Both the position numbers and the translations under genes were made by a program. The notes beneath the pieces were generated by a model. That model did no database searches. It was not told the DNA's origin and was given only the letters and a program-made list of their open reading frames with translations. From Mizuhopecten yessoensis (lineage: Eukaryota): a DNA stretch of 64,000 nucleotides. The stretch lies in the NCBI RefSeq assembly GCF_002113885.1, contig NW_018480070.1, positions 248,001 through 312,000 on the forward strand. The letters run 5' to 3'. Positions 1-59,994 of the stretch are shown here, piece by piece. Position 1 is the stretch's first letter. Each line of letters starts with the position of its first letter.

Positions 1-7
1 ATATAGA

Positions 8-22215: not shown

Positions 22216-23218
22216 ATGGCACAACGATCCGAGGGCGAATGTGACATGGAAAATAGGGATCCAAACGATCTGAACGACCATTGCAAGGTAAGGAAATTGT
22301 ACATATACTGTTAATAACAAAGAGTGAATACATGTCTAAGCAACACATTTTTTTTTTTAACTTCTCAATAAAATAAATGAAAAACGGTAATCCTTACGAA
22401 AAATTCAACGAATTCCTTTTAGTATTTTTCTAATCTAAAACCAAATCAATCATGTTTTTACAGAAGTATTGCAAACACTTCGGCTTATCTTAACAAACAA
22501 AAATTCAAACTTGATCGCGAAAACATTTTCAGGATTGTTTTTTTTTTCTATTTGAATTTAAGTCTGTAGTTCCAATATATTGTATAACGGTTGTCCATAA
22601 CAACAGTAATAACCAAACCGGAACAAGAAAGTTAAAGACATGTTTTCTTTTGAGTGACAATTTAATGTTCAGCTAAGACATTTAATTACCATAGGTTGAT
22701 TGTTATAAGTGATTTATCTTATGAATTTCAATGGAGAAGAGCAACCCAGTGAAATAGGTCATCACAAAACTTTAAATAATGTTGTTCTTCAGAACCTTGA
22801 TTTCTACATCGTAAACATGCATGCTGTTAAAAATGTCTTGATGTTACAATACGTTAATTATATTGTCGTTTCTTGTCTGAATCAGGTTGCTTTCGAGGAT
22901 GTCTTGGGAGAACCAGAAGGCGCTCACAGCATGGACTGCGTGTGGAAGAACAGTTACTGGTGTTTCACCTGCGGTAAAAACTGCTGCTACAAGCTCATGA
23001 CCTGTCTTTGTGGAATTTGCATCGCCCTATACTGGGGTTGTGAGTTTGCCCTGATTGCTTTCGACCAAATCTGGTGCATAACTCCCTCTCTCAGAATCTT
23101 CGCCATCTACTGTGGATGCGCCCAGAAGTTCTTCGGCACTATCGTTCAGTGTTTCCTGGCCCCGATCTGCGAGACCTGTGGACTATGTTTCAGTCGAATA
23201 ACAGTTAAGAACTCGTGA
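22216..23218 (+). CDS. Caveolin A (caveolin-1/-3-like, Cys-rich, 134 aa); join(22216..22287,22886..23218)
   Basis: Exon 1 MAQRSEGECDMENRDPNDLNDHCK|GTAAGG; CAG acceptor; exon 2 VAFEDVLGEPEGAHSMDCVWK...WCITP...FSRITVKNS*. Carries the caveolin RDP motif, an FEDVIAEP-like signature and the P132 equivalent; AATAAA at 23524. Confidence 0.95.
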
Positions 23219-23699
23219 TTCGGCATACCGCCCAGGAGTCATACATATTTCTTGTGCAACAGATAAAATGTAACTGCTTTTATGGGCAAGCATCCTCTCC
23301 TTACTCCTGGTTTTCAAAAACAACTTTTTCCAAATGGATTTTTACGCATTTAAGGTGAAGTCTACTTTATTTTCCAAATTGGATACATTATTTGTCAAAT
23401 TTACATTAAAAGGAAAGGCATTGCCAAAATATGGAAGCTCAAGTGACGAAGTCGTTTTAAACTGTGATATTTATGTTTACCATATTTTTATTTATAATGC
23501 AATTGTCTTGTACATATTATAAAAATAAATTTTGTATTTAATAACTTATATCCTTGCTTTTTATTTGAAGTTAGAAAGATACTCATAAAACTACTTACTT
23601 AATACTTTGCGATCAAATCGTTTCAGAATGACTACAAATGCTTAACAATTTTTCGCAATAAACATTTCAGTATATGACAACATACTTAAGTGGCAATGG

Positions 23700-23865
23700 T
23701 AACCAATGAAGCACTACAAAATCTGTTCATAGCAACCAATCTAATACATATTTGTTCATAGCAACCAACCGGATACATATTTGTTCTTGGCAACAAACCG
23801 GATACAAATTTGTTTATAGCAACCAACCGGATACAGTTTTTTTTATAACAACCAACCGTATATAT
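23700..23865. repeat. Short ~29-30-bp tandem repeat (TTTGTTCATAGCAACCAACCGGATACA..), about 5 copies
   Basis: Direct repeats visible. Confidence 0.75.
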
Positions 23866-24427
23866 GTTTTTAACCTTTCGAATAACATACAAGGCGTAGC
23901 TTGCTTTGATGACAATTTTTGCGGTTTTTTATTTGAACATTTTTATAATATCAATTTGATGTTCTCTACAAAGGAATAATGTGTTATTTAGTATTACTGA
24001 GAGATAAACAGGTATACCTAATTAGTGAAAAAGGACAACTTGATAAACATTTCTATTTTTGACCAACTCGTAGTTAAGCTTTTATTATATTGGGTTTAAC
24101 GTCCGATTAACAGCTGAGGTGATAAAAGGACATGTGTCTAACGTATGCATTCAAGTGTGTATATGTGCTGAAATAGGTATTCTGGTGTAATTGCCTACTT
24201 GCAATGTGATGCCGACTTTATAGTGCTACCTCATTTAAATACCATGTCGAAAACACCCAGCATAGCAGGGGTATTTGGGATGGAACTATAACATAATTAT
24301 TTTTGTGAATAATCATGCATCACATCTTTTCAGTAATACTGATATCACGAACCTTTGTAAGTAAATAAAGCACAATCACACAATGAAAGCAAAAACACAC
24401 AATGAAAGCAAAATCACAGAGTGTTTT

Positions 24428-25188
24428 CATATTGTTACACACAATCATATTGTTTCACACAATCATATTGTTACACACAATCATATTGTTACACACAATC
24501 ATAATGTAACACACAATCATAATGTTACACACAATCATATTCTTACACACAATCATAATGTTACACACAATTATAATGTTACACACAATCATAATGTTAC
24601 ACACAATCATAATGTTAAACACAGTCATATTGTTACACACAATCATATTGTTACACACAGTCATATTGTTACACACAATCATATTGTTACACACAGTCAT
24701 ATTGTTACACACAATCATATTGTTACACACAATCTTAATGTAACACACAATCATAATGTTACACACAATCATAATGTTACACACAGACATATTGTTACAC
24801 ACAATCATATTGTTACACACAATCTTAATGTAACACACAATCATAATGTTACACACAATCATAATGTTAAACACAGTCATATTGTTACACACAATCATAT
24901 TGTTACACACAGTCATATTGTTACACACAATCATATTGTTACACACAATCATAGTGTTACACACAATCGTAATGTTACACACAATCATATTGTTACACAC
25001 AGTCATATTGTTACACACAATCATATTGTTACACACAGTCATATTGTTACACACAATCATATTGTTACACACAGTCATATTGTTACACACAATCATATTG
25101 TTACACACAATCACAATGTTACACACAATTATAATGTTACACACAATCATAATGTTACACACAATCATAATGTTACACACAATCATAT
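24428..25188. repeat. 18-bp minisatellite (ACACACAATCATATTGTT), about 42 copies
   Basis: Exact 18-bp period; it generates the spurious THNHIV/CNNMIV/LHTIIL ORFs. Confidence 0.97.
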
Positions 25189-28100
25189 CGTTCGCCGAAA
25201 TCTTTCGTTTCCGAACGTACACGTCCACTTGTTCGCTCCGTACACAGGGTGATGCTATGATATAAGCGACATGTGATACATAGTTTTGTTTGATTCGTTG
25301 TATTACTTTATCCGCTTATTTTTTATTATGCCATACACTAATACAGATAAACAAACATTGGCTACCAAAATGTGTGCTCATCATTACTGACAAGAAAAAA
25401 ACATAGCATACATTTTCCCCCATACATTCCATTCAAAATTATGATGATATCTGCACTACATCATGGTTAATAGTATCAGCTGCAAAACAAATGACGCCAT
25501 AGAATGTTGTTATGTCACGTGATCATAACGTTACACTTTGTTGACAATGTAACTATGGTCCAAACAGTCTTTGCCATTGCTTTGGAAAGTGTTTTTTGTA
25601 AGATAAACGGGTTTTAATTGGAAACAGACGGATAATCCATTAACTATTTTAATGTAGAGTCAATCATGGGGATCGGAGGTCAACGGGCTTTTGTGCCTAA
25701 AATTAAGGACATGTTCCCAAGCATTTGAAATACCCAGGAAGTAAATTGTTTCAGATTCTTGATAGGCGTTTTTCAGAAAATTTTGTTCTCAATTCAAAAG
25801 AGCTTTTTTTTCTGATATATGGGACATTCGCCAGAGCTTCGCAAAACAATGCACTAAAATCACAATATGAATGGACATGGAATGACACAATGCAAATGTA
25901 AAATTTCAAGAATCATTTTCGTCAATGAAAGTGAGAAAAGTTTGTAATAGTCCAGACGTCTACCTACGCAACGTGATGTCTTGCACTATGACCGTAGCTT
26001 AATATTTGTTTATAGTGCTTCGAAAATATCAGATGGAGTTAAGTGTTTGTTAGGAAAACAACGAAACACATGCGTTATTGCAAAACAAGAAGTTCGATAA
26101 TGGCTGTCTCAATTTCAACGTAAATATCAAAATATAATCATTCATACTTAGTATTAACAATATATATCATAATTTAGCTTATACGATTCTTTTATGACGA
26201 AACGGCTGGTTTGTACTATCAGTAAGACTTTGTCGATAGCGTAAACTATCAGATAAATAAAGGCTAGAACGTTCGTCAAATAGAAAACCCTGCTTATTGA
26301 TATCTTCGTTGTTGTTTAGTGTCTTTTTAGTGTCTTGTCGTATTACATTTGAGTTTAAATTTGATCCTTCTGTGTCTTTGCCTTGATAGTTGTGTTCTAC
26401 TTTAAGTAGTTATGAGTTGAAGAGCTGGGATGGACATAGTAATACTAGGAATTCCTTAGGTGCCTAACTTCTATATTAATAGTGTGAACTGCTGACCTTA
26501 GACCACATTAGAATACTTTGTTTAACAAATACAAAACTCCTTGATATAAGATTAATTTGTGTATCTTTTTTTTTTATATAATTGTAAGGGATTAGATTTG
26601 TCTTCCTTAAAAATGAATGTTTCTTGATAAGGTCTCTTGATTAATACCTTTCACATCAAATATGTTTTCTAAGTAAAATAGAAAAATGGAAATCGATGCA
26701 ATCGACGTAGATACAAAAAATGAATAAAAGGATCTTAAGGGATTCGAGAAAAAAACCCGGGAAACATGAGAACTCGGATTTTAAGGTGATTAGTTGGATT
26801 AAGCGTATCTGCACCACATGTGTCATCGTTCATGATGTCTCGTGCACAATTTAGGAAACATATTGGTCACCAAGGGTTTCGTCATATGGTAGACTTCAAT
26901 TCAGGTATTTCAAGATAAAGATAAAACACATAAATTGTTTTAATCTTTGCCGCTGAATCATTGAGAAATTTTCGGTGCCATATACTCCTAGTTGCATTAC
27001 TTATAATAGAGTACCATGTTACTGTTCAATGTCAATAGAGGCTCCGTTTTCAGTATCAATGATAGGTTCTGAATCGAACAAAAGACGGAAATGAAATTTG
27101 GATATGACAGGAAACACTCATACCAGCACACACTCACACACACAACCACACACAAAGAATAAAATACAGACCCAAAAATATCACGCAATAAGATATTTAA
27201 GCATTGAACTGTTTTTGTATGGTATTCATGATCTATTTGACTGACACAGCTTTGCAAGCAAACAACATAATGCATAGTTCAATACTTATATTTACGTTTT
27301 CTCTGCATCTTATGTTCTTTTTTAACTTCTAATTTATATTCAAAATTAAAAATGCCCGCCTTATCGACAGTTCACACAATTTCGTTCAATAGTTTGAACA
27401 GCGTATTGTCGCGTGCTGATTGGCAAACACGGTAGTACTTTGAAATTTTAACAACCATTTCAATTTTATTCCACAATTCAGTATCAATACAATTGCGTAT
27501 GATATGTCTATAGGGTGATTTAAGTTTATCAATAGAACTCTGAGCTGAAAGTTAGATTTGAAATTGTTTCGCGCATGGACAAATACAGTGAACACCGTAA
27601 ATCCGACCTTGCCCTCCACGAGGGAGTTATTTTTGGAAGTTAATTCGAACTTTTCTCTTTGCTCATTTTGTGAAGAAACCAGGCGTGAATTTATTTGTTG
27701 ATTGTATGGGAACCTGACAACAGTCGGTAGATTCTATAACAGCATCGTTATTTGACATGTCGTCAGAAACTGAGGAACCGTGGATGCGAGACGCGTGAAA
27801 CTGATAGCGTTTGAAGTGAGTGATCTTGCGACGGAGCACAGGTTCGTTACAAATGTCTGAAATGTTTATGTGTGCTGTGACTCATATCAGTAGGTCTGTA
27901 ACATATGTGTCAGTAGGTCTATAGAATATGTGTATTTCAGACATTTGTAACGAACCCCTGTTGATCAGTGCAGTGTAACAGACGATATTTCTGATAAATT
28001 GCATGAGCGTTAAAATTGTTTCCATTGCCGGCATTGGTGATTTCAACCGATGTGCATTTTGTACGATATTGCAGACCTTGGTCTTGTTTTCGTTGTAATA

Positions 28101-29994: not shown

Positions 29995-31879
29995 ATGGCT
30001 CAGCAAAATGAAGGTCTTGATTTGACAGCCAGAGATCCAAACTCCCTTCATGGGGACATACAGGTTAGCTTTTCATTTTTTCTGTTTTTCTTTCTTGTTG
30101 TCATATACCTATTGACATAAGTCGGTTGTCAGGTATGATAATGCGATTGAGTGGAATTGGGGGTATTGATAGGGGGAGTTAAGTAACTCAATAGGAATGA
30201 GTAAATGAATGTTTGTTCTTATTTGATAGGCAAAGCGTCATCTAAGGAAAATGTGAAGCAATCATCTTCATTTTTTTTATGTTTCTATTTAAAGTCAGTT
30301 CCTACAGATTTTTTTATCATTTATCCGTGCTTCTTACATAGTGTTACCTGTTTAAATGTGCAATTTAACATTTCAAAAAGGATAATGTAAGGATGTAAGA
30401 AAGATAATTGATCAGTCTCAACCCTTTAGTGTAATTATAAATAAACAATGCATCGACATTTGTTAAGATGACTTTGCGATGACCGTGTGATGTTATTAAG
30501 GTCATTGGAGTGTATCGATAAACGGAAACAGGAAGTACATCCCTAGTTGAAAATCCAATGTAGGGAGACAGTATCACAATTTCCGCAAATTCCAATGTTT
30601 AATATTAAACTGATGGATATTGTATGTTTATTATTGACAGAACAGTGTGTTCTCTCAATATTAAAGTATTTCAAAGCAATCCAGGCATCAATTCAGGGTT
30701 TTTTTCAATGAGTCACATGTGTCCATTTTTTCTGTACTTCAGGAAACCGGCTACCTATTTCACTACTGTGAAGGTTTTCAAGAACGATAACTCTTACCTG
30801 CAATTACTATGTGTATATGGTTTTATCATAAAATGTCAATTTGTATATCGTGTATAGAGAATTAATTTTACACAATTTCAGCATTCATTAAATTGATATA
30901 CATTAATGCAATACTAATATTTGTCAGTATCATTTTTATTGACATTATTTTGTAAAAATATTGTGTCTTTCATTTTTTTTTTCAAAATTCACTCCTCTCT
31001 ACATAAATTTCCATTTAAAATCCTTAAAATTCTGAGAACCTATATTTTTTTTTCGGCAGAAAATTTTCTTTACTTTAAAGCAATATAACTACAAAATTTG
31101 AAGAAATTCTAACGAGAAATGGTGACACAATCCTATTACCTTAATATACTTTATATGCTTATATTATTTTAATTATTTCATGTGGTATTCAATATGGTTC
31201 TTAGCGAAATATTTAACACTATTTCTGCAACATTAAATTCTCACCAAAGTTATAATTTAAAATTCTTATTTTGTTTATGTGTGAATCTGTCTTAAACTCT
31301 ATTACATTATATCAAAAATCAAGTATATTGTGAAACGTTTGATCTTTACATTCCCGTTCTGACGTATTAAATATATTGTAACAGAATGCAGTTCATTATT
31401 TCTATAGTAGTAAGCAATGTTGATTATCACTAGCGATTAACTTGTTTATCGATAATGTAAATCTTGAGTTATGCACTTAATACAAAGAAATGAATTCTGC
31501 AATGTATGCTGATCATATATATAATAGTAGTGACTTCCTTTAACAGGTTGCCTTTCACGATGTGTTGGGCGAGCCAGACGGTACCCATAGTATCGACTGT
31601 TTGTGGACCTCCTCTCACACGTGCTTCACCTGCTCAAAGAACTGCTGCTACAAGTTTGTCAGTACTTTGTGTGGCCTCTGCATCGCTGTTGCCTGGGGTT
31701 GTGAGTTCGCCCTGATCACCTTTGAGGCAGTGTGGTGCTTTACACCAGCTCTCAAGGCCTACTCAATAATTATGGGAATTAATCAGCGGTGCTTCGGTAT
31801 TCTCATCAGCTGCTGTCTTGCTCCAATCTGTGAAACATTTGGATTATGCTTCAGTAATATTTCAATGAAAAAGATGTGA
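29995..31879 (+). CDS. Caveolin B (133 aa); join(29995..30063,31547..31879)
   Basis: Exon 1 MAQQNEGLDLTARDPNSLHGDIQ|GTTAG; exon 2 (333 bp) VAFHDVLGEPDGTHSIDCLW...FSNISMKKM*. Confidence 0.95.
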
Positions 31880-32229
31880 AAACAATTGACAATCGATGAG
31901 ATATCTAAACTGATCGATAAATGTTACGTTTTCATATACTTGAAGGTGAGAGGATATCTTATGAAAATGCAGTGACTTCTAGATGACTTGTCTTGATAGC
32001 TGCATGACTTCGATAAGCTGAAACATGCTTTGTGCATATCAGGAACAAATCTAGAATCGTAATCACACGGACGTTCATAACATACCGTATAATGGAATGT
32101 CTAGATGCTTAACTGTAAAAAGTGTCGGTCACCAGCAGGCTAAATTAAAATGTTAAATAATTTATATGTTGTGCTTATTTCTTTCTTTGTTTGTTTTTAA
32201 ATATGCTGTAAAATAAGCTAGGCATATTA

Positions 32230-34135
32230 TATCAATAAGCCCCGGTCGATACAGAAGCATCTAATAAGTGAACCTATTACACTGATATAGACTCGTCTAA
32301 TAAGTATACCTAATACACTGATTCAAAACCGGCTAACAAGTATACCTATTACACTGATACCGAACCGTTTAACAAGTAATTACACCTATTACACTGATAC
32401 CGAACAGCAAACACGTTAACCTATTACAAAGATACAGAACCGGCTAACAAATTAACCTATTACCCTTATACAGAACCGGCTAACACGTAATTACACCTAT
32501 TGCACTGATACCGAACCAGCGAACAAGTTAACATATTACAAAGATACAGAACCGGCTAACAAGTTAACCTATTACCCTTATACAGAACCGGCTATCAAGT
32601 AATTACACCTATTACACTGATACCGAACCAGCTAACAAGTTAACATATTACAAAGATACAGAACCGGCTAACAAGTAAACCTATTACACTGATACCAAAC
32701 CGGCTAACATGTATACCTATTACACTGATACAGAACCGGCGAACAGGTAATTACACCTATTACACTGATACCGAACCGGCTAACACGTTAACCTAATACA
32801 CTGATGCAGAACCGGCTTCCAAGTAAACCGATTACACTGATATAGGTTTAGCTAACAAGTTTACCTATTACACTGATACAGAACCGGGTAACAAGTATAC
32901 CTATTACACTGATACAGAACCGACTAACAAGTAATTACACCTATTACACTGATACCGAACCGGCTAACACGTTAACCTAATACACTGATGCAGAACCGGC
33001 TTCCAAGTAAACCGATTACACTGATGTAGGATCGGCTAACAAGTTTACCTATTACACTGATACAGAACCGGCTAACAAGTAAACCTATTACACTGATACA
33101 GAACCGACTAAAACGTATACCTATTACACTGATACAGAACTGGCTAACACGTTAACCTTTTACACTGATACCGAATCGGCTAACACGTAAACCTTTTACA
33201 CTGATACAGAACCGACTAACAAGTATACCTATTACGCTGATACAGAACTGGCTAACACGTTAACCCATTAAACTGATACCGAACCGGCTAACAAGTAAAC
33301 CTTTTACACTGATACAGAATTGGCTAACACGTTAACCTATTACACTGATACCAAACCGGCTAAACAATTAAACCCATTACACTGATACAGAACCAACTAA
33401 AACGTTAACCTTTTACACTGATACCGAACCGGCTAACAAGTAAACCTTTTACACTGATACAGAACCGACTAACAAGTATACCTATTAGATTGATACAGAA
33501 CCGACTAACAAGTAAACCGATTAAGCTGATACTGAACTGGCTAACACGTTAACCCATTAAACTGATACCGAACCGGCTAACAAGTAAACCTTTTACACTG
33601 ATACAGAACCAACTAAAACGTATACCTATTACACTGATACAGAACTGGCTAACACGTTAACCCATTACACTGATACCGAACCGGCTAACAAGTTAACCTA
33701 TTACACTGATACAGAACCAACTAAAACGTATACCTATTACACTGATACAGAACTGGCTAACACGTTAACACTGATACCGAACTGGCTAAACAATTAAACA
33801 TATTTCATTGATACAGAACTGGCTATCAAGTATACCTATTACACTGATATAGGACCGGCTAACACGTATACCTATTACACTGATACAGAACCGGCTAACA
33901 AGTAAACCGATTACACTGATACAGAACCGACTAACAAGTTATTACACCTATTACACTGATACAGAACTGGCTAACACGTTAACACTGATACCGAACTGGC
34001 TAAACAATTAAACATATTTCATTGATACAGAACCTGCTAACATTTTAACCCATTACACTGATACAGAACCGGCTCTCAAGTATACCTATTACACTGATAT
34101 AGGACCGGCTAACAAATATATATATTACACTGATA
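32230..34135. repeat. 36-bp minisatellite (CCTATTACACTGATACAGAACCGGCTAACAAGTAAA; 39-bp variants), about 1.9 kb
   Basis: Period of 36 bp (TACAGAACC at 33061 and 33097). Confidence 0.97.
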
Positions 34136-34645
34136 CATGATAGGTTAAACAGTACATCTGTACACTGATTACGATACATAAATACATTTAATATACATAG
34201 GAAATATGCTGACATGAGCATGTTGCCATAGTAATATCTTTCACATTTTATTAATGTCTGCTTACTGGTCTCAATAAATGTTAATTTCAATTACCTATTA
34301 TATTTTGGTGGTTGTATTTAATGTATTAAAATAAACAATATATTTCTACAAGATGATAACAAATCTTTGCATATACCTTTTTGTATAATAGTGAATTGTA
34401 CCATAAAGTACATATAAGCATCACATTATACTATAAAATACAAGTACCATATTGTTTTATACTATACAATGCATTTAGCACAGTGTATATTTCTATAGAA
34501 ACCTGGACCACATTGTTGTGAGTTATGCTAAGTATTTTATACTACAAAATATACACATATGTATTTTTCACAGACACAACGAGTTGGTAACAGTCAGGGG
34601 CACTAAATTCCTTTGTTTAAATATATTAATTTAGTTAATCTAGCC

Positions 34646-35446
34646 ATGGATGGTTATACATTCGACCTGATGAACAGAGATCCTAACTCGCTCAAATTTT
34701 CTATAGAGGTTAGAGGTATGTATTATTTGTTATGATTTGGTTCAATTAAATGAATATTCCTTAAAGTGAATATTATTACATTTTCGCCAGACAAATATCG
34801 AACTTTATCACTTGATAAAAATGAGATATTTTGCTCTATAACAGATATCAAAAATGATATTTTACAGTATGAAAAAAACATTTATGGGATTCATTTATCA
34901 GAACGGCACTTTCTATTCACTTCATTCGAAATTGCAGATAAAAATAAAACGAAGGTAGACTAAGTAGTTGTTTTGGATACATCTTAGCTAGATTTATTAG
35001 ACACCAATTTACATTTTACTATGTCTTATTTATCATGTAATCAAACTTATCAAACAATAGCACAAAATGGTAGAATTTGTTTTAATAGTTAGCTCTTAAT
35101 TTTTTTGTTTGGATAGGTTGCCTTTGAAGATGTTTTGGGAGAACCAGAAGGGACACATAGTATTGACTTATCTGGCAACACAGCTATTCTTGCTTCACGT
35201 GTGGAAAGAACTAGTGCTACAAGTTCATGAGTACTTGTGTGGCATTTGTATCGCGCTTTACTGGTGGTGTGAGTTCGGCATGATCACGTTCGAGATGGTG
35301 TGGTGCTGTACACCCTCTCTCAAAGTCCACACCATCCTTCTCGGGATTTGCCAACGTTTCTTCGGATCATGTATCCGGTGCTGCCTGGCTCCTCTCTGTG
35401 AAACCATGGGATTATGTTTCAGTAATATTACTATTAATAAAAGTGA
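34646..35446 (+). pseudogene. Caveolin C pseudogene; exon 1 34646..34708, exon 2 35117..35446
   Basis: Exon 1 MDGYTFDLMNRDPNSLKFSIE. Exon 2 starts VAFEDVLGEPEGTHSID, then has a 1-bp deletion (~35169), TAG at 35212-35214 in the ancestral frame, a second 1-bp deletion (~35235) and a third in the A-run before the ancestral TGA (35444). About 200 bp of promoter, including the TATA present in F/G, is missing. Confidence 0.92.
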
Positions 35447-39242: not shown

Positions 39243-39394
39243 AAACAATTGACAAGTGATAAAATATCTAAACTTTTTAATTTATATTTTATTTTCCATG
39301 CTGGAGAAGGTTATACCATCACATCAGCTGGACTTCATTCATTAGAAGAACATTATTATTGATATGGTGAAATAAACAACGATTGTACGTACAT

Positions 39395-43751: not shown

Positions 43752-43822
43752 GACCCTCCCCTTTCGTCAGTCTGACAGTTGTCAAGCAATTATCAATCGA
43801 CAAAAAACTGATAGGTATAAAA
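43752..43822 (+). promoter_or_regulatory. Caveolin E proximal promoter: GACCCTCCCCTTTC, TGACAGTTGTCAAGCAAT, TATAAAA
   Basis: The same three motifs occur in the same order upstream of F (47814-47898) and G, in otherwise unalignable sequence. Confidence 0.6.
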
Positions 43823-43902
43823 TCCAAACGCAGGACAATTTCGACCACTCACAATATAACGCTTGTCTTGTTCACCTCAGTTTTTCCAACAAACACAACA
43901 AC

Positions 43903-45913: not shown

Positions 45914-46140
45914 GCCGCGCTGGCAATCTGACAATCTGCTACCACTAACCTTCTGCCACTAGATCGCGGGTTCGATGCCTACATTTTGTACGTAGGGCAG
46001 TTGCTAGGTATTGACCGTAGGTCGGTGGTTTTTCACCGGGAACTCCGGCTTTCGTCCACCACCAAAACCTGGAACGTCCTTAAATGACTCTAGCTACATG
46101 TATTAATAGGACGTAAAACAAATACACACTAAACCAAACA
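45914..46140 (+). mobile_element. V-type SINE (head partly deleted), same family as 40219..40443
   Basis: GCCGCG...CTGCTACCACTA...GGGTTCGAT...GGTCGGTGGTTTTTCACCGGGAACTCCGGCTTTC...AAACCAAAC. Confidence 0.8.
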
Positions 46141-46200
46141 ATATATAAAAACAAAGAAACAAAGAAAGTAATATTTTAGAACGTTGACAGTGAAATGCAC

Positions 46201-46387
46201 ATACTGTGTACCGGACAATTTTCGCCACAGTTTAATTTTCGCCTTTTTCGCCCTCCGTAATAAGGGTGAATTTATCATGAGAGCTAATATTAGACTACAT
46301 CATACCATTTATATTAAATTCATATGAAAGGCGAAATATACACCTGGCGAATGTTTGACTGAGCGAAAGGTACCCGCTATACAGTAT
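46201..46387. mobile_element. MITE with ATACTGT...ACAGTAT termini and TTTCGCC/GGCGAAA subterminal motifs
   Basis: Inverted termini; duplicate at 50676..50862 and an inverted relative at ~37.6 kb. Confidence 0.65.
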
Positions 46388-47813
46388 CATTTATTTCTAT
46401 GGTGTTACATACTACTATTGACCATTGTTATTAATCGTTGAATATTTGAAGAAAAGCTTTGTCAGGCCCAGCATCAATACATTTGTAGATCAAAAATACA
46501 TATATTTTAGTTGCAAGGCGTTGCATCACTAAGTGTTACGCATTAACACAGTTTTCAAATGAATGAAAGGTCTAGTATCAGTATTTGTAAAATGACATTT
46601 TCTTTCGACGAATTGTGTTCAAATGAAATCATAAATCGGGATGGAAGGGTGAAAATCAACGAACGTAAAAAGAGTGATAATGTTTGAAACTATGCCTATT
46701 ATGTACAATGCAAAAATGGGGGAATGAAAGAGGACCGGTTAAGAAATACATCGAATAAACTAATACATAACCGGCTAACAAGTTAACCCATTACACTGAT
46801 ACAGAACCGGCTAACAAGTATACATATTTCACATATACAGGACCGACTAATAGGTTAACCTATTACAATGCTTCAGAATAAATATATACTAATAAATGCA
46901 TTAAAATCAGAAAATACGATGACATTAGCATGTTGCCACATTACCAACTTTCAGTTTTTATAATTTCCTGTTTACTGGTCATAATAATCGTTTATTTGAA
47001 TTACCGTATTCTGGTTTGATGCCTGTATTTAATGTATTAAAATAAAACAATGTATTATTGCAAGATGATAATCTACCGTATTTACCCAGAATGTAGTATA
47101 ACTGTCAATCATTGATTGAAATTGCATGTAGTATAGTGTATTATACCATAAAGTACATTAAAGCGCATCTCATTATTCTATAAGATACATGTACCATATT
47201 GTTTAATACTTTAAAATACTTTAACACAATGAAATATTCTATAGAAACCTGAACCATATTGTATTCACTACAACATACATGAACCGCAATGTATTATACT
47301 ATACTATACGTGTACTGCATTGAATTTAACACTAATTTTATACATTCTTATAATGTGTATCGACTATACTAGTAGTAATACTTTAGTTAGCATGATACAG
47401 TATCCAATTCTAAAGAATTGACAAATTATTCTTATAAACCACGACCTGTGTCTATCATTGGCTATCATTGTCATTAGCTCAAATTTAATTTTAAAAAAAA
47501 TAGAAATCGTAATTTCACGCACATGACGTTTAAGACATTGTTAACAATATGGACGTCTATTTACGTTTGTTTCGAACATTCTTTTATATATCAAAACACA
47601 TCAGAGAGTAGAAAGTGAGTGTAGGAAAACGTCCATATTTAATTGCTTTTAAATATATAGACCGAGTTTGGTAGAGTGTCATTGATCTATAGTTTAAAAA
47701 CACACATATGCATTTTTCACATACAGCGAGTTGGTAACAGTCAGGAGCACTAAATTCCTGTTTTTAAAGACATAGCATAATGGCGTTTCCCTTGGATTCC
47801 ATTGAAACTTTAG

Positions 47814-47898
47814 GACCCTCCCCCTTTCAAATCATCCATTCAGATTTATAGAGACAGTTGTCAAGTAATCGGAGTATACACAACACAGCCGTATAAAT
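47814..47898 (+). promoter_or_regulatory. Caveolin F proximal promoter (C-rich box, GACAGTTGTCAAG, TATAAAT); copy before G at 52289..52373
   Basis: Motifs shared with the E promoter; TATA 83 bp upstream of the ATG. Confidence 0.55.
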
Positions 47899-47974
47899 TC
47901 GATTCTTTTTTCATTGTTCATTACTTGTAGTCATTCTCTTTATCTGTGCGGATAAGACGACAGTATATCCAGCC

Positions 47975-49344
47975 ATGGAGGAACAATCCCCAGTCGATCT
48001 GGAGAACAGAGATATCAACTCTCTTAATTCATCTATACAGGTATGTATCATTTGTTATGATTTGGTTTAATTAAATGTATACTACTAAAAGTAAATATCA
48101 TTACATTTTTGGCGGATGAATATCGAATTCTATCACTTGATCAAAACGATATCTTTTATCCAGGAGTTATATTAAAAGTGTGAATATATCACCTATACAA
48201 ACTCACTAATCAGAACGGCACTTTCAATTCACTTCATTCAATACTGCAGATTTTCTGTTCAGATACAGATGAAATGATGGTAAAATAAATAGTTGTTTTT
48301 TATACTTCTTAGTTAGACTTACGAAGGAATTAATTTACCTTTATAACTTTAACCATTTATTATATAAATCTCATCAAATAATAACACGAAACTGTAGAAT
48401 TTTGTCGAGTGGCTCTTTCACAACTACATGCAACCTTGTTGTCAAGCATGACGTCATTAGAACATGGCGGCAAAGTAGCGCAGTCATGTCTCAAAATATT
48501 TTGATACAATTACATTTTCGTCGTTGTAGGTAGTTTAAAAATGGTATTAATATAGACATTTAATTTTTTTGCGTTTATTATTAGTATATATATATATATA
48601 TATATATATGTTTCAATCATTTGGCAGAATAAACCGATATTTTCACTCATGAAAAAATTAAGTATTTTGCTATAATCGAAAACTATATATGTGATAATCA
48701 ACTGAATATCCTGTATTTATCTTCCTATGGCAATCTTTATGGAATGGTTTAAAGTTTTACAGTGGTTTAAAGAGTGGTGTTGATTTGCATTTGGAAATGC
48801 TAGGGACACATACTAGTGAACTGCTTAATACCATACCACAAGAACGATTAATTTAAGTTGATAAAACTTGTTCTTTCTTTGTTGTTAAAGAAGATACAAA
48901 AAGTAAATGACTTGCACCAGGGGATACGAAAACACACGAATTTGTGCATTGTTAGGATGTCCTTTCTATTTATATCACATTTAATTTTTATTTAATTCGT
49001 TGTTTTAATAGGTTGCCTTTGAAGATGTTTTGGGAGAACCAGATACGACACATAGTATCGACTGTGTCTGGAAAAACAGCTACTCATGTTTCAATTGTGG
49101 AAAGAATTGTTGCTACAAGTTCATGAGTACGCTGTGTGGTATTTGTATCGCGCTTTACTGGGGATGCGAGTTCGCCATGATCACGTTTCAGATGGTGTGG
49201 TGCTGTACACCCTCTCTCAAGGTCCATACCATCATGCTCGGCATTTGCCAACGTTTCTTCGGATCATGTATCCAGTGCTGCCTTGCTCCTCTCTGTGAAA
49301 CCATGGGATTATGTTTCAGTAATATCACTATTAATAAAAAGTGA
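47975..49344 (+). CDS. Caveolin F (132 aa; G/E chimera); join(47975..48040,49012..49344)
   Basis: Exon 1 MEEQSPVDLENRDINSLNSSIQ|GTATGT; exon 2 (333 bp) VAFEDVLGEPDTTHSIDCVWK...FSNITINKK*. Confidence 0.93.
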
Positions 49345-50388
49345 GGAGACGTTGTTTCATGAGTTTAGTAACTCGATAGACTAATCAACCTACTTTGTGC
49401 TATATGGCAATCAAAAGACTGTGATACTGACTGATTTCGACAGGGATCTGCAATTGAGTCAATCATGTTTTTACAAACACTTGATACTTCTGGGAAATAT
49501 TCAATGAACTATTTATAAATCATCTGTTAATATTCTAAAGACATTGCTGCATTTCTTTTACAATAAAATATTTGTTTATATATTTATTTATTTTGTGAAT
49601 TTGTTCTCTGTGTAATACTTGCATGAATACATTTTTGTCGCCATTATCATAACAAACACGCTCTCCCTGGGTAATATATGAAATTCAAATACTATTGAAT
49701 GAAGACAAAGGTGTCTGCGAGAATCGGACACCAAATCCCGTAAGTCCCCTTCAAACTTCGAGACGTTGCATTAGTTGTTTAGGTTGTTGCTATGGTGACC
49801 ATCAGTGGATTACTCGTACTATGCCTATGTTGTGAGGACAATAGTAGTGCACGGTTCTATATCAAAGCAAACGAATATTATATGTATTTAGAATTAAAAT
49901 CTTTAAGCTAGCATATGAAACAATATGTTTTGATAACAATATACAATTACTTACTTCCCTTCCACTATTTCGAAAATTATAGTGCATGTTTTTCAAGACA
50001 TGCTTATTTCATCAACAAGACGTTTATTTGGTCTAAAGCAAATGGAATGCTGTTTGCTTACAGTCGCAACGCATGTGTTATTCCACCTAGAAATATTATT
50101 AACAGAGGTCATTATTTTTTCAATGGATTCGAAAAAAGGACCTCTTGTTTACCAGTCTACCGAATGAGCTATAGAGAAATTCTCCCAGGCCGAGTCGGTA
50201 GTAAGCAACATGTATTTTACCAAGGTGACAATTAAAAAGATATACAAAACAAGTGTTGTGTAGGGTTAGTTTTTTCAGTGAATTTAATATATAAAAACAT
50301 TCTTAAATTTTTTGAAATAAGATAAAAAGGCTCTTGTGTGAAAAAAAGACAAACAAATACTTAATTGACAACAGAGCGCTTCTACATA

Positions 50389-50615
50389 GCCGCGCTGGCA
50401 ATCTGACAATCTGCTACCACTAACCTTCTGCCACTAGATCGCGGGTTCGATGCCTACATTTTGTACGTAGGGCAGTTGCTAGGTATTGACCGTAGGTCGG
50501 TGGTTTTTCACCGGGAACTCCGGCTTTCGTCCACCACCAAAACCTGGAACGTCCTTAAATGACTCTAGCTACATGTATTAATAGGACGTAAAACAAATAC
50601 ACACTAAACCAAACA
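50389..50615 (+). mobile_element. V-type SINE, duplicate of 45914..46140
   Basis: Identical copy within the 4475-bp duplication. Confidence 0.8.
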
Positions 50616-52449
50616 ATATATAAAAACAAAGAAACAAAGAAAGTAATATTTTAGAACGTTGACAGTGAAATGCACATACTGTGTACCGGACAATTTTCGC
50701 CACAGTTTAATTTTCGCCTTTTTCGCCCTCCGTAATAAGGGTGAATTTATCATGAGAGCTAATATTAGACTACATCATACCATTTATATTAAATTCATAT
50801 GAAAGGCGAAATATACACCTGGCGAATGTTTGACTGAGCGAAAGGTACCCGCTATACAGTATCATTTATTTCTATGGTGTTACATACTACTATTGACCAT
50901 TGTTATTAATCGTTGAATATTTGAAGAAAAGCTTTGTCAGGCCCAGCATCAATACATTTGTAGATCAAAAATACATATATTTTAGTTGCAAGGCGTTGCA
51001 TCACTAAGTGTTACGCATTAACACAGTTTTCAAATGAATGAAAGGTCTAGTATCAGTATTTGTAAAATGACATTTTCTTTCGACGAATTGTGTTCAAATG
51101 AAATCATAAATCGGGATGGAAGGGTGAAAATCAACGAACGTAAAAAGAGTGATAATGTTTGAAACTATGCCTATTATGTACAATGCAAAAATGGGGGAAT
51201 GAAAGAGGACCGGTTAAGAAATACATCGAATAAACTAATACATAACCGGCTAACAAGTTAACCCATTACACTGATACAGAACCGGCTAACAAGTATACAT
51301 ATTTCACATATACAGGACCGACTAATAGGTTAACCTATTACAATGCTTCAGAATAAATATATACTAATAAATGCATTAAAATCAGAAAATACGATGACAT
51401 TAGCATGTTGCCACATTACCAACTTTCAGTTTTTATAATTTCCTGTTTACTGGTCATAATAATCGTTTATTTGAATTACCGTATTCTGGTTTGATGCCTG
51501 TATTTAATGTATTAAAATAAAACAATGTATTATTGCAAGATGATAATCTACCGTATTTACCCAGAATGTAGTATAACTGTCAATCATTGATTGAAATTGC
51601 ATGTAGTATAGTGTATTATACCATAAAGTACATTAAAGCGCATCTCATTATTCTATAAGATACATGTACCATATTGTTTAATACTTTAAAATACTTTAAC
51701 ACAATGAAATATTCTATAGAAACCTGAACCATATTGTATTCACTACAACATACATGAACCGCAATGTATTATACTATACTATACGTGTACTGCATTGAAT
51801 TTAACACTAATTTTATACATTCTTATAATGTGTATCGACTATACTAGTAGTAATACTTTAGTTAGCATGATACAGTATCCAATTCTAAAGAATTGACAAA
51901 TTATTCTTATAAACCACGACCTGTGTCTATCATTGGCTATCATTGTCATTAGCTCAAATTTAATTTTAAAAAAAATAGAAATCGTAATTTCACGCACATG
52001 ACGTTTAAGACATTGTTAACAATATGGACGTCTATTTACGTTTGTTTCGAACATTCTTTTATATATCAAAACACATCAGAGAGTAGAAAGTGAGTGTAGG
52101 AAAACGTCCATATTTAATTGCTTTTAAATATATAGACCGAGTTTGGTAGAGTGTCATTGATCTATAGTTTAAAAACACACATATGCATTTTTCACATACA
52201 GCGAGTTGGTAACAGTCAGGAGCACTAAATTCCTGTTTTTAAAGACATAGCATAATGGCGTTTCCCTTGGATTCCATTGAAACTTTAGGACCCTCCCCCT
52301 TTCAATTCATCCATTCAGATTTATAGAGACAGTTGTCAAGTAATCGGAGTATACACAACACAGCCGTATAAATTCGATTCTTTTTTCATTGTTCATTACT
52401 TGTAGTCATTCTCTTTATCTGTGCGGATAAGACGACAGTATATCCAGCC

Positions 52450-53832
52450 ATGGAGGAACAATCCCCAGTCGATCTGGAGAACAGAGATATCAACTCTCTT
52501 AATTCATCTATACAGGTATGTATCATTTGTTATGATTTGGTTTAATTAAATGTATACTACTAAAAGTAAATATCATTACATTTTTGGCGGATGAATATCG
52601 AATTCTATCACTTGATCAAAACGATATCTTTTATCCAGGAGTTATATTAAAAGTGATATTTTTACAGTGTGAATATATCACCTATACAAACTCACTAATC
52701 AGAACGGCACTTTCAATTCACTTCATTCAATACTGCAGATTTTCTGTTCAGATACAGATGAAATGATGGTAAAATAAATAGTTGTTTTTTATACTTCTTA
52801 GTTAGACTTACGAAGGAATTAATTTACCTTTATAACTTTAACCATTTATTATATAAATCTCATCAAATAATAACACGAAACTGTAGAATTTTGTCGAGTG
52901 GCTCTTTCACAACTACATGCAACCTTGTTGTCAAGCATGACGTCATTAGAACATGGCGGCAAAGTAGCGCAGTCATGTCTCAAAATATTTTGATACAATT
53001 ACATTTTCGTCGTTGTAGGTAGTTTAAAAATGGTATTAATATAGACATTTAATTTTTTTTGCGTTTATTATTAGTATATATATATATATATATATATGTT
53101 TCAATCATTTGGCAGAATAAACCGATATTTTCACTCATGAAAAAATTAAGTATTTTGCTATAATCGAAAACTATATATGTGATAATCAACTGAATATCCT
53201 GTATTTATCTTCCTATGGCAATCTTTATGGAATGGTTTAAAGTTTTACAGTGGTTTAAAGAGTGGTGTTGATTTGCATTTGGAAATGCTAGGGACACATA
53301 CTAGTGAACTGCTTAATACCATACCACAAGAACGATTAATTTAAGTTGATAAAACTTGTTCTTTCTTTGTTGTTAAAGAAGATACAAAAAGTAAATGACT
53401 TGCACCAGGGGATACGAAAACACACGAATTTGTGCATTGTTAGGATGTCCTTTCTATTTATATCACATTTAATTTTTATTTAATTCGTTGTTTTAATAGG
53501 TTGCCTTTGAAGATGTTTTGGGAGAACCAGATACGACACATAGTATCGACTGTGTCTGGAAAAACAGCTACTCATGTTTCAATTGTGGAAAGAATTGTTG
53601 CTACAAGTTCATGAGTACGCTGTGTGGTATTTGTATCGCGCTTTACTGGGGATGCGAGTTCGCCATGATCACGTTTCAGATGGTGTGGTGCTGTACACCC
53701 TCTCTCAAAGTCCATACCATCATGCTCGGCATTTGCCAACGTTTCTTCGGATCATGTATCCAGTGCTGCCTTGCTCCTCTCTGTGAAACCATGGGATTAT
53801 GTTTCAGTAACATTACTATAACAAAGAAATGA
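52450..53832 (+). CDS. Caveolin G (132 aa); join(52450..52515,53500..53832)
   Basis: Exon 1 identical to F; exon 2 (333 bp) ends FSNITITKK*; unique 3' UTR with AATAAA at 54135. Confidence 0.95.
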
Positions 53833-57864: not shown

Positions 57865-57871
57865 TATAAAA
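57865..57871 (+). promoter_or_regulatory. Candidate TATA box of caveolin H
   Basis: TATAAAA 68 bp upstream of the ATG. Confidence 0.45.
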
Positions 57872-57932
57872 TGGGGAAGAAATATAGCAACAATAGCCAG
57901 TCTAAGAAAACAGTTCTGAGGATTAACTCACC

Positions 57933-59994
57933 ATGGCAGAACAAGAAATGATTGTTGATGTGGTAAAAAGGGACCCGAATGAGATTAATGCTGCTATACA
58001 AGTAAGTTGTGCCAATTTATTTCTGTCTTTACCGCATATTGCAATTATAACAACTTGGCATGTATGGTTTTATTCAAACTTCCATTTATCACCGAGCTAA
58101 AATGTATATTTGTTAATTTCTAATAAAATGTACCACTAAGGAAGAGTCCGGAATTAACGCAAAACATATATCTGATTGAAAACTATATAAGCTCAGGGCA
58201 ATAAAATATCAAGTGAATAGAAAGCGTTTACATCAGATAAACGTGATCATCAATTAGTTTAAATTGAGCAAAGGACTTGGGGCGTTATGGGTCATTTTTG
58301 GCCTCATAAAGAAATTAAAATTTCAACATAAATGTATTTACCAATTTCTGTTATAAACATCATATTAGTTAATTGGGGCTATCTTTCTTGGTTGTATATG
58401 TTTTCCAATGCGCATGCGTAGATGCCCTATCATAGCAACGAAATTGCGTTGCTATGCAGAAATAGCCAAACTATGGTGTTTTTTGGACAGTAAGCATGCA
58501 GAAAGTAAAGCCTCCGCATGTGACAAACAAAATTTCCTTTCTACGAATGAACACTGGTATGAAAATGTTTAAGCATGTCAAATATCAATTTGTTTATTGC
58601 ATACGGAGGTCTTTCAAAAATTTAAAAGTGTTTAGTTAATTTCCTTCAAAATGGTCAATTTTCAACTAAATAACGCAAAAAAGACGATATTCACGCATTT
58701 TATTATGAAAATGATGGGGTTTTGTGTCTCTTTGTAATGCCATTTCTCTTAAACTGGTTGTCGAATGAGTTTGATATCTCATATTTACTCCAAATTACGA
58801 ATATAACAACAAATTCCAAATCCCCAATGTGGCCGTAAATTACCTTCAACGCCCCTAGTCCATTATTTACTTTTAGATTTTTAGCTCAATGGAAGAAAAG
58901 CCTAGACTATGTACATATCCACTAAAAATCGAAATCGTAATTAAAAATGATTAGTAATAAGTATCCACTTTATATTAGACATTCATCTTTATAACCCTAT
59001 ACGTAGTGTTGTCCTAGTTTACAGTGTGCTATATGCGCAACCAAACAATTGATGATGGTTCAAACAAAGGATACAGCCTCAGAACACGTATTAATAGCAA
59101 ATGGTAGAGTATCCCTTTTGAAGTAATTATTTTTGCCAATTAATGAAATTTACGAATTTACATGAGCAATGATAGCTCAGTGTGAAAAGAGCTAAAGCTG
59201 GGTTGGAAGCTCACACATGACGTTACAGCTCACACAACAAAGCTGAAGTTTATAAAACCAAGCAATAGTTGCTATGAAACCTAATAAAACAAAATCAGAA
59301 AATCAGCGGTTAGTATGGTATCTAACAAGACAAAGTTACAGTAAAATATATGATTTTGGGGGTTTTTTCATTCTTTTTTTACTTGGTATAACTATGGCTA
59401 TATATTTAACCAAACATCGCTGGTATATTTCACTAAGTTGGATGAATACTTTATTTTATAAAATCTTTCGATGCGTCATCCTACTTTTTTACTGATTGGG
59501 TAAAACATCACGTATAGTTGTTTAAAAAACATAACATCTTGCAATTTTGTTCTGAAATTAGAAAATGTTGACATCAGTTTCACCATGATACCTTTTTTCC
59601 ACAGCGAAAATGTCACTGTCTTTATCAAAAGAATATTCACAGTGATCAAATTTAATTTCAGACGAACTTCGAAGACGTTCTTGCTGAACCAGATGGTACA
59701 CACAGCTTTGATTTTATCTGGAAGTACAGTTACGTGTGTTTCAATGGAGGAAAAAACTGTTGCTATAAGTTTCTGAGCACATTATGTGGTTTGTGCATGG
59801 CGCTATTCTGGGGATGTGAGTTCGCAGTGATCACGTTTGAGATGGTGTGGTGCTACACGCCGTTACTGAAAGTCTACACGATTTCTATGGGACTCCAGCA
59901 GAAGTTCTTCGCCGTTTGTATCAACTGTTGTTTGGCTCCTATTTGTCAGACTTTTGGAATGTTCTTCAGTAACATTAACGTTAAGAATGGTTAG
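57933..59994 (+). CDS. Caveolin H (133 aa); join(57933..58001,59662..59994)
   Basis: Exon 1 MAEQEMIVDVVKRDPNEINAAIQ|GTAAGT; exon 2 (333 bp) TNFEDVLAEPDGTHSFDFIWKYSY...FSNINVKNG*; AATAAA at 60230. Confidence 0.95.
58273..58861. mobile_element. ~590-bp TIR element in the caveolin H intron (possibly Kolobok-type)
   Basis: GGACTTGGGGCGTTATGGGTCATTTTTGGCCTCAT ... ATGTGGCCGTAAATTACCTTCAACGCCCCTAGTCC. Confidence 0.7.

What the first reader, a model, noticed from the sequence alone, without database searches (positions are those of the whole stretch)
22216..59994. Tandem array of eight minimal caveolin genes with a variable exon 1 and an invariant-length 333-bp exon 2
Seen: eight same-strand caveolin loci in 38 kb, all with one phase-0 intron two codons before the F[E/H]DV signature. 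Coding exon 2 is exactly 333 bp in all seven intact genes, while exon 1 encodes 19-24 divergent residues around D-x3-RD[P/I]N-x-[L/I]. Known: humans have three caveolins, and CAV1 forms an 11-mer disc. Inference: a lineage-specific expansion of core-only caveolins (no Tyr14-type N-terminal extension) under strict length constraint. The subunits could co-assemble into hetero-oligomeric discs or be deployed per tissue. This is the best candidate for an undescribed system here, although caveolin expansions in molluscs may already be catalogued.
Basis: partly seen in the sequence, partly recalled or inferred. Interest (0 to 1): 0.8.

Follow-up and report, generated by a model that had tools for sequence, protein, structure and literature searches.

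The report
Scallop tandem array of caveolin genes
The eight short caveolin genes are real, and the three tested (g5, g6, g7) are transcribed, two of them verifiably spliced as modelled. They are the first half of a 16-gene array that the Yesso scallop shares with other scallops and that public databases already annotate, so this is an ordinary, tidy gene-family expansion rather than a new system.

Summary
Observation confirmed. Eight + strand two-exon caveolin loci lie at 22216-59994: seven intact and one pseudogene. Each has a phase-0 intron two codons before F[E/H]DV. Exon 2 is 333 bp in all seven intact genes, and exon 1 encodes 19-24 residues.

Interpretation partly supported.
- The genome is Mizuhopecten yessoensis, and several of these genes are already annotated there.
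- The array continues past the window to 16 loci in ~86 kb. The genome has at least 30 caveolin loci.
- Argopecten irradians and Pecten maximus carry collinear orthologues, so the array predates this species.
- The 333-bp exon 2, the ~130-aa "core-only" form and the high cysteine content (median 15) are shared by spiralian relatives. The core aligns to human CAV1 without indels. Four array members beyond the window have longer C-terminal tails.
- RNA-seq shows exact splicing of g5 (112 junction reads) and g6/g7 (43 reads), with strong differences between samples.
- dN/dS is 0.05-0.18.

New here: exon-2-limited gene-conversion tracts (g2/g4 and g5/g7), and g6 as a g7-5'/g5-3' recombinant, which could instead be an assembly loop.

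Hetero-oligomeric discs remain untested. The scan had already noted the sister cluster on another contig. No paper found describes these arrays. Interest is modest.

The parts
22216..23218 (+). g1: exon 1 22216-22287 (24 codons), intron 598 bp, exon 2 22886-23218 (333 nt)
   Evidence: Orthologue in A. irradians at 89%; Ylistrum balloti P0012 at 86%.
29995..31879 (+). g2: exon 1 29995-30063 (23 codons), intron 1483 bp, exon 2 31547-31879
   Evidence: Groups with A. irradians P0005 (99/94).
34646..35447 (+). psi3: pseudogene. Exon 1 34646-34708. Exon 2 from 35117 has three 1-nt deletions (near 35169, near 35235 and just before the old stop) and an in-frame TAG.
   Evidence: Exon 2 is 89% identical to g5/g6 and the flanks are 70-75% identical and collinear with the g6 unit.
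38329..39242 (+). g4: exon 1 38329-38385 (19 codons, CAG|GT donor), intron 524 bp, exon 2 38910-39242
   Evidence: The model equals database protein P0011 (129 aa, M. yessoensis).
43903..44869 (+). g5: exon 1 43903-43971 (23 codons), intron 565 bp, exon 2 44537-44869
   Evidence: 112 RNA-seq reads (65 start points) cross 43971->44537 in X24. Intron depth is 0. An X1 contig carries the same joint.
47975..49344 (+). g6: exon 1 47975-48040 (22 codons), intron 971 bp, exon 2 49012-49344. Recombinant: g7-type up to 49140, g5-type from 49221 onward.
   Evidence: 43 RNA-seq reads cross 48040->49012 (the same junction sequence occurs in g7). Mosaic structure.
52450..53832 (+). g7: exon 1 52450-52515 (identical to g6), intron 984 bp, exon 2 53500-53832, with its own 3'UTR
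   Evidence: The g7-type letter A at the position equivalent to 49221 appears in 37% of X24 reads.
57933..59994 (+). g8: exon 1 57933-58001 (23 codons), intron 1660 bp, exon 2 59662-59994 (starts TNFEDV)
44495..53832 (+). Recent tandem unit of 4,475 bp: 44495-49344 matches 48970-53832 at 99.2% over 4,865 bp
49141..49220 (+). 80-bp stretch identical in g5, g6 and g7 exon 2, within which g6 switches from g7-type to g5-type
31532..31911 (+). Exon-2-limited homology tract of g2, 94.5% identical to 38895-39274 of g4. Nothing else in the two loci aligns.
   Evidence: dS 0.146
53458..53832 (+). Exon-2-limited homology tract of g7, 94.4% identical to 44495-44869 of g5. It ends exactly at the stop codon.
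24427..25192 (.). Intergenic 18-bp minisatellite (42.6 copies)
32248..34137 (.). Intergenic 36-bp minisatellite (52 copies) between g2 and psi3

Best explanation
This is the 5' half of an old, transcribed tandem array of 16 caveolin loci (14 intact, 2 pseudogenes; ~86 kb) in the Yesso scallop Mizuhopecten yessoensis.

Each gene has the two-coding-exon layout of a CAV3-type caveolin. Exon 1 gives a 2-8-residue acidic stub plus the pin motif. Exon 2 gives the signature/hook motif, the scaffolding segment, the helical spoke region and a short C-terminal strand.

The array was already diversified into about ten paralogue lineages in the common ancestor of scallops. It changes by unequal crossing-over (g6 is g7's 5' part joined to g5's 3' part) and by gene conversion confined to exon 2 (g2/g4 and g5/g7). 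Copies that break decay (psi3, psi12), and the rest stay under purifying selection.

Inferred, not shown: the proteins form CAV1-like oligomeric discs in the cytoplasmic membrane leaflet and work without cavins, and the paralogues are divided up mainly by where and when they are expressed.
For: Family: Pfam Caveolin at 105-113 bits for each exon 2. g4's product aligns to human CAV1 7SC0 residues 48-172 at E 3.6e-26, with its only gap in the exon-1 part.

Species and annotation: P0011 equals g4. P0002 and P0008 equal g11 and g14.

Extent: 15 Pfam hits on this contig plus psi12, 11 on C1463 and 4 elsewhere.

Age: all 14 intact genes fall in one clade (96/90) with oyster, mussel, Solemya and other scallop proteins. 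Gene order is collinear in A. irradians (g1-like, g2/4-like, g5/6/7-like) and in P. maximus (g10/11-, g13-, g14-, g15-, g16-like).

Expression and splicing: exact GT..AG joints with 112 and 43 reads and empty introns. X20 and X23 are near zero at similar depth.

Selection: dN/dS 0.05-0.18.

Mechanism of change: a 99.2% identical 4.9-kb tandem unit, the g6 mosaic, and homology tracts of 380 and 375 bp confined to exon 2.

Cavins: no PF15237 hit in this genome. The literature says invertebrates lack cavins (PMC12330381, PMC7383883). Ciona Cav-a bends membranes without cavins (PMC7383883).
Against: Disc formation, membrane insertion and any cellular role are inferred from homology alone. The AF2 monomer model is one long helix, and Foldseek found no PDB match.

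Only g5 and g6/g7 were tested with reads. g4, g11 and g14 rest on public gene models. g1, g2, g8, g9, g13, g15 and g16 have no expression evidence here.

The sample identities of the runs are coded, so "tissue-specific" cannot be told apart from condition- or individual-specific.

The tree has only 110 columns and many forks are unresolved.

Orthologues of g8 and g9 were not found in the stretches fetched.

The cavin search had no positive control.
Confidence: 0.8

Rival explanations
1. One reading: the paralogues are built to co-assemble. Equal-length cores let different subunits mix into hetero-oligomeric discs, while the variable exon-1 pin motifs tune which subunits pair.
For: The cores are indel-free across paralogues. 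Exon-2 conversion keeps neighbours alike while exon 1 stays distinct: 54% against 70% mean identity. g5 and g6/g7 are transcribed in the same runs, X24 and X1. Vertebrate CAV1/CAV2 hetero-oligomers are established knowledge. Han et al. report one AF2 hybrid model for sponge caveolins (PMC12330381).
Against: Equal core length is a family-wide trait shared with human CAV1, so it is no sign of design for mixing. Co-occurrence in a bulk RNA sample does not show co-expression in one cell.
Confidence: 0.2
2. Part of the copy number is an assembly artefact. g6 and the second 4.5-kb unit could be a loop that the assembler walked twice through the 80 bp shared by g5 and g7 exon 2. The true locus would then be g5-g7, giving six intact genes in the window.
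For: g6 carries no base of its own in exon 2: it is g7-type up to 49140 and g5-type from 49221. The two units differ by only about 0.6% outside the exons, in what I recall (not tested here) as the usual range for allelic differences in bivalves. A stray 597-bp contig is 100% identical to both g6 and g7. The public model P0001 joins g5's exon 1 to g7's exon 2. The RNA letter counts fit a genome without g6 about as well as one with it.
Against: There is no N or gap anywhere in 124 kb. An unequal crossover gives exactly the same structure, and pseudogene psi3 shows that this lineage has duplicated before. The read data do not exclude g6.
Confidence: 0.3
3. Neutral birth-and-death. The copies are largely redundant products of a recombination-prone, minisatellite-rich region, kept for dosage at most, with no division of labour.
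For: 2 of 16 loci are pseudogenes. Minisatellites fill several spacers. Recent copies are nearly identical.
Against: About ten lineages have kept their positions since the scallop ancestor. dN/dS is about 0.13-0.15 even for old pairs. Expression differs sharply between samples.
Confidence: 0.15

Closest known systems
Human caveolin-3 / caveolin-1 (Type II caveolins; CAV1 8S complex, PDB 7SC0)
   Same: Pfam Caveolin over the full profile. Pin motif, FEDV-type signature and spoke region align residue for residue with CAV1 48-172, with no indel in the exon-2 part. The two-exon layout resembles CAV3, which has two exons (PMC3132216). From memory, the human intron also lies two codons before FEDV in phase 0.
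   Different: Only 2-8 residues precede the pin motif, against 48 in CAV1. There are 11-18 cysteines in the core against 3. CAV1 Pro110 and the aromatic residues at 98/99 are cysteine here. The C-terminus is about 3 residues shorter. There is no cavin partner in the genome. There are 16 tandem copies instead of 3 dispersed or paired genes.
Orthologous caveolin runs in Argopecten irradians (CM084275.1) and Pecten maximus (LR736844.1)
   Same: Same strand, 4-5 kb spacing, same gene order, same intron position, same 108-aa F-to-stop distance in most copies, and 75-90% identity to their M. yessoensis counterparts.
   Different: A. irradians has three genes where M. yessoensis has seven loci (g1 to g7). 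The extra copies g4, psi3 and g6/g7 are absent from the 21-kb stretch fetched.
Second scallop caveolin cluster on contig C1463 (earlier scan finding s1-515145)
   Same: Short, Cys-rich, two-exon caveolins in a cluster shared with other molluscs.
   Different: It forms a separate mollusc-wide clade (100/99). Exon 2 is 327 bp, the intron lies three codons before the F, the C-terminus ends in FIHFKK-type residues, and strands are mixed.
Ciona Cav-a (cavin-independent invertebrate caveolin)
   Same: An invertebrate caveolin in a genome without cavins. It bends membranes and forms wide-necked pits (PMC7383883), which makes it a working model for what the scallop proteins may do.
   Different: Ciona has three caveolins, not dozens, and the scallop proteins have not been tested functionally.

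Membership tests
Caveolin (Pfam PF01146) | Profile match above the curated cut-off | tested here: met
   105-113 bits against a cut-off of 25 for each of seven exon 2s, covering profile positions 24-132 of 133. Thirty loci genome-wide exceed the cut-off.
Caveolin (Pfam PF01146) | Signature motif FEDVIAEP at the start of the core | tested here: met
   F[EH]DVL[GA]EP in all eight window loci.
Caveolin (Pfam PF01146) | Collinear alignment to a solved caveolin | tested here: met
   P0011 (= g4) residues 3-126 align with 7SC0 residues 48-172 at E 3.6e-26, with one 1-residue gap in the exon-1 part.
Type II caveolins (Han et al. 2025) | Pin motif N-terminal to the hook | tested here: met
   V/I-D-L-x-x-R-D-P-N-x-L-N in exon 1 aligns to CAV1 residues 49-60. 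[quoted passage not shown] This is sequence-level evidence only.
Type II caveolins (Han et al. 2025) | Protomers assemble into an oligomeric amphipathic disc with a central beta-barrel | not testable with these tools
   Only monomer prediction is offered. It gave one long helix (pLDDT 81, pTM 0.46), and Foldseek found no PDB match.
Functional gene (not a pseudogene array) | Transcribed and spliced as modelled | tested here: met
   g5: 112 junction reads. g6/g7: 43 junction reads. Introns are empty. g4, g11 and g14 match public models. The other copies were not tested.
Functional gene (not a pseudogene array) | Purifying selection | tested here: met
   dN/dS is 0.05-0.18 for recent pairs and has a median of 0.13 over 18 pairs.
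Classical caveolae system (caveolin + cavin) | Cavin (PTRF_SDPR, PF15237) partner present | tested here: not met
   No hit at E <= 0.01 in the 988-Mb genome. There was no positive control, so this is a weak negative, but it agrees with the literature (PMC12330381, PMC7383883).
Lineage-specific expansion (M. yessoensis only) | No positional orthologues in related species | tested here: not met
   Collinear orthologues exist in A. irradians and P. maximus for 8 of about 10 lineages.

The most novel reading that the evidence does not exclude
Spiralian short caveolins may be a functionally distinct, cysteine-striped class. Eight cysteine columns are invariant in all 14 paralogues, several spaced i, i+3/4, i+7 along the helices, and they replace bulky hydrophobic residues of CAV1. 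That would give more than 150 thiols per disc for heavy S-acylation or for redox or metal sensing. In scallop arrays, exon-2 conversion would keep cores compatible for co-assembly, while diversifying pin motifs in exon 1 would set the pairing rules.
Probability: 0.1. Interest if true: 0.6.

Novelty: new member of a known kind. Interest (0 to 1): 0.3.

Why it matters
Caveolin biology rests almost wholly on three vertebrate genes and their cavin partners. A genome with at least 30 caveolin loci and no cavins offers natural variants of one disc scaffold: the same core length with different pin motifs, inner-spoke segments and tails. These could be used to ask which parts set oligomer size, mixing and curvature.

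The array is also a clean small example of how tandem families evolve. It shows an unequal crossover mapped to 80 bp and conversion tracts that stop at the exon borders.

None of this overturns current views. Large tandem families are common in bivalves, and these genes are already annotated.

Tried and rejected
(1) The AF2 monomer model of g4's product gave a single long helix, and Foldseek against the PDB found nothing. This is uninformative for an obligate oligomer, so I did not go on to VIA or atlas searches.

(2) A look-up of transcript contigs encoding P0011 found nothing on record.

(3) Seven of the eight literature searches were aimed at the arrays, and found no description of bivalve caveolin arrays or of cysteine-rich caveolins. 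Han et al. list only two P. maximus caveolins and do not mention cysteine or palmitoylation.

(4) I tried to decide from the RNA letter counts whether g6 is real. The marginal counts fit both cases.

(5) The chimeric public model P0001 (g5 exon 1 joined to g7 exon 2) suggested read-through splicing. No g5-exon1-to-g6-exon2 joint reached the reporting threshold. The g7 acceptor lay outside the 6-kb stretch.

(6) The cavin search was negative but had no positive control.

(7) I considered and rejected that the array is species-specific, and that the 333-bp length is a constraint special to this array.

Spliced (joined) protein models were not sent to any tool. Exons were searched one at a time by reference, and full-length checks used the database protein P0011. 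The large representative-protein search was not used, because the family is not in doubt.
Full report
**What is there**

A tblastn search with the window's own exon-2 ORFs finds eight copies. All are on the + strand, ending at 23218, 31879, 35447, 39242, 44869, 49344, 53832 and 59994. Counting back 333 nt from each stop lands, in the seven intact copies, directly after a polypyrimidine tract and an AG. The reading frame there opens two codons before F[E/H]DV.

The exon-1 motif D-x3-[RK]-D-[PI]-N occurs eight times on the + strand, each time upstream of an exon 2, and never on the - strand. Each exon 1 starts at an ATG in good context and ends at an in-frame GT. Exon 1 encodes 24, 23, 21, 19, 23, 22, 22 and 23 residues, and introns are 408-1660 bp. 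Pfam Caveolin matches each intact exon 2 at 105-113 bits (cut-off 25) over profile positions 24-132 of 133.

The copy at 34646-35447 has three single-base deletions and an in-frame TAG. The window has no N.

**Whose genome, and is it already known**

The word search returned annotated caveolins of Mizuhopecten yessoensis.
- P0011 (129 aa) is exactly the g4 model.
- P0002 and P0008 are the genes I call g11 and g14.
- P0001 joins g5's exon 1 to an exon 2 identical to g7's.

The window is G000:C76743:248001-312000. So the genes are in public annotation as "caveolin-1-like" or "caveolin-3-like".

Seven of eight full-text searches were aimed at bivalve caveolin arrays, and none found a paper describing them. 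Han et al. 2025 (PMC12330381) list only two P. maximus caveolins.

Incidental hints exist:
- Caveolin is an enriched family among RAR-dependent genes in oyster larvae (bioRxiv 10.1101/2025.03.09.642214).
- "cav1-8 and cav1-9" mark one ciliary cell cluster in a flatworm larva (bioRxiv 10.1101/2023.01.04.522730).
- Caveolins are under-expressed in vibriosis-resistant Argopecten purpuratus larvae (PMC10020363).

**The array is twice as long**

A Pfam search of the whole genome gave 30 loci above the cut-off: 15 on this contig, 11 on C1463 and 4 elsewhere. I fetched the next 60 kb and modelled 16 loci between window-equivalent coordinates 22 kb and 108 kb. All are on the + strand; 14 are intact and 2 are pseudogenes (psi3 and psi12).

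Exon 2 is 333 nt in eleven of the intact genes, but 345, 351 and 360 nt in g16, g13 and g9. Every difference is a longer C-terminal tail.

**Age**

I built a tree of exon-2-equivalent regions (70 rows, 110 columns, many open forks). All 14 intact array genes fall in one clade (96/90) together with oyster, mussel, Solemya and other scallop proteins. The C1463 cluster falls in a separate mollusc-wide clade (100/99).

Fetching the loci of two scallop relatives showed collinear runs:
- A. irradians: g1-like (89%), g2/4-like (75%), g5/6/7-like (90%) within 10 kb.
- P. maximus: g10/11-like, g13-like, g14-like, g15-like (89%), g16-like (88%) within 18 kb.

Solemya velum has at least four exon 2s in 30 kb. 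The Magallana gigas orthologue stands alone beside a P450 gene.

The array is therefore ancestral to scallops. Only some copies (g4, psi3, g6 or g7, one of g10/g11, psi12) look specific to this lineage.

**The "strict length" and "core-only" points**

g4's product aligns to human CAV1 (7SC0) residues 48-172 at E 3.6e-26. Its single one-residue gap lies in the exon-1 part.

Among 114 spiralian relatives:
- The F-x-D-V-to-C-terminus distance is 108 residues in 47.
- 20-25 residues precede the motif in most.
- Core cysteine content has a median of 15.

That search sees only proteins of 60-192 aa, so longer relatives are not sampled. The acceptor two codons before the F, and the 108-residue distance, recur in A. 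irradians, P. maximus, Solemya and M. gigas.

CAV3 has two exons (PMC3132216). From memory, not tested here, the human CAV1 and CAV3 introns lie at the same codon and phase, and their last coding exon is 342 nt. Length constancy is thus a property of the family's core, and the minimal form is a property of the spiralian subfamily.

**Expression**

I gave the read tools the 5.9-kb stretch 43700-49600.

In the raw RNA-seq run X24:
- 112 reads (65 start points) cross a GT..AG joint which, with the stated +2 shift, runs 43971->44537.
- 43 reads (29 start points) cross 48040->49012.
- Both introns have zero depth, and the exons have 40-68 reads per strand class.

The contigs of X1 carry the same two joints. 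X20 and X23, read to similar depth, have almost nothing on the exons. A g7-type letter at 49221 in 37% of reads shows that g7 is transcribed too. No g5-exon1-to-g6-exon2 joint was reported.

The remaining copies were not tested.

**How the array changes**

Self-comparison shows that 44495-49344 and 48970-53832 are 99.2% identical over 4,865 bp.

Base by base, g6 has this structure:
- Exon 1, the intron and exon-2 bases 1-128 are g7-type.
- Exon-2 bases from 209 onward, the 3'UTR and the downstream sequence are g5-type.
- The switch lies in 80 bp shared by all three copies.

That is the expected product of an unequal crossover between g7 and g5. It is also what an assembler could produce by looping through the shared 80-mer. 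A stray 597-bp contig is 100% identical to both g6 and g7, which adds to the doubt. I put the artefact at about 0.3.

Separately, two pairs share homology confined to exon 2:
- g2 and g4 share 94.5% identity over exactly 380 bp (exon 2 plus 15 bp upstream and 32 bp downstream). Nothing else aligns.
- g5 and g7 share 94.4% over 375 bp, ending at the stop codon.

dS is 0.15-0.21 for these pairs but saturated for other pairs. This pattern indicates gene conversion confined to exon 2, and it explains why exon 1 looks variable while exon 2 looks constant.

The pin-anchored part of exon 1 averages 54% pairwise identity, against 70% for exon 2. dN/dS is 0.05-0.18. psi3 is a decayed copy of the g5/6/7 lineage, collinear with the g6 unit, and psi12 is a decayed copy of g13. 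Minisatellites occupy several spacers.

**Protein features**

Within the array, variability is highest at CAV1-equivalent positions 132-157 and in the last six residues. It is lowest at positions 102-131.

Cysteine is invariant in all 14 paralogues at CAV1-equivalent positions 91, 98, 107, 110, 117, 129, 154 and 160, and nearly invariant at 83, 99, 155 and 94 (numbering). In g4, none of these cysteines aligns with the three cysteines of human CAV1 (133, 143, 156), which from memory are its palmitoylation sites. CAV1 Pro110 is cysteine here.

What these cysteines do is unknown. S-acylation or helix packing are guesses.

**Function**

Shown: family membership, transcription, splicing and purifying selection.

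Inferred: disc-forming monotopic membrane proteins that act without cavins. No PF15237 hit was found (a weak negative), and the literature agrees (PMC12330381, PMC7383883). Ciona Cav-a shows that cavin-free curvature is possible. Monomer structure prediction did not help.

**Method notes and verdict**

Exons were handled by reference, and full-length work used P0011.

Earlier scan notes on the C1463 cluster, the g6 chimera, the cysteine pattern and gene conversion agree with what I found.

Verdict: a real, well-behaved tandem family of a known kind. Interest is modest.

Noticed in passing
window 22886-59994 and L031-L035: Array caveolins carry 11-18 cysteines in the ~110-residue core. Eight columns are invariant in all 14 paralogues, at CAV1-equivalent positions 91, 98, 107, 110, 117, 129, 154 and 160. 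The trait is shared by 114 spiralian relatives (median 15 Cys). Han et al. 2025 do not mention cysteines.
   Followed up: partly
G000:C1463:657000-767000 (L001, L004, L005, L010, L011, L019-L022, L025, L026): A second caveolin cluster of 11 loci on mixed strands. It includes a distinct subfamily (exon 2 of 327 bp starting TLLFNDV), two truncated copies, and one Cys-poor, vertebrate-like caveolin (L001; 138 bits, the best Pfam score in the genome).
   Followed up: partly
L028 = G000:C64963:1-597: An unplaced 597-bp contig is 100% identical to both 48589-49185 (g6) and 53077-53673 (g7). This is leftover redundancy from the duplicated unit.
   Followed up: yes
window 49086 and 49089: In RNA run X24, about 12% of reads placed on g6 carry the two g5-type letters at these positions, with at least one such read showing no other g5-type difference. 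This may be a short conversion patch segregating as an allele.
   Followed up: no
window 43860: Three X24 reads have about 55 unmatched letters before 43860, hinting at a further upstream non-coding exon for g5. The ATG in those loose letters is out of frame with the main start codon.
   Followed up: no
window 2-1317, 17035-20113; extended coordinates 66036-66758, 70396-73136, 83710-90327: Large minisatellite arrays (periods 35 bp and others; the last is 6.6 kb long) flank and interrupt the caveolin array. The 17-20 kb array explains the local rise in G+C. No other protein-coding gene was evident in window 1-22000.
   Followed up: partly
window 44982-45635: An X1 contig at about 4% of the exon-2 depth continues about 770 bp past the g5 stop. 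This may be a longer 3'UTR isoform or read-through transcription.
   Followed up: no
P0001 (public M. yessoensis 'Caveolin-1', 133 aa): The public gene model joins g5's exon 1 (43903-43971) to an exon 2 identical to g7's (53500-53832), skipping g5's own exon 2 and all of g6. RNA reads support g5 exon 1 splicing to g5's own exon 2.
   Followed up: partly
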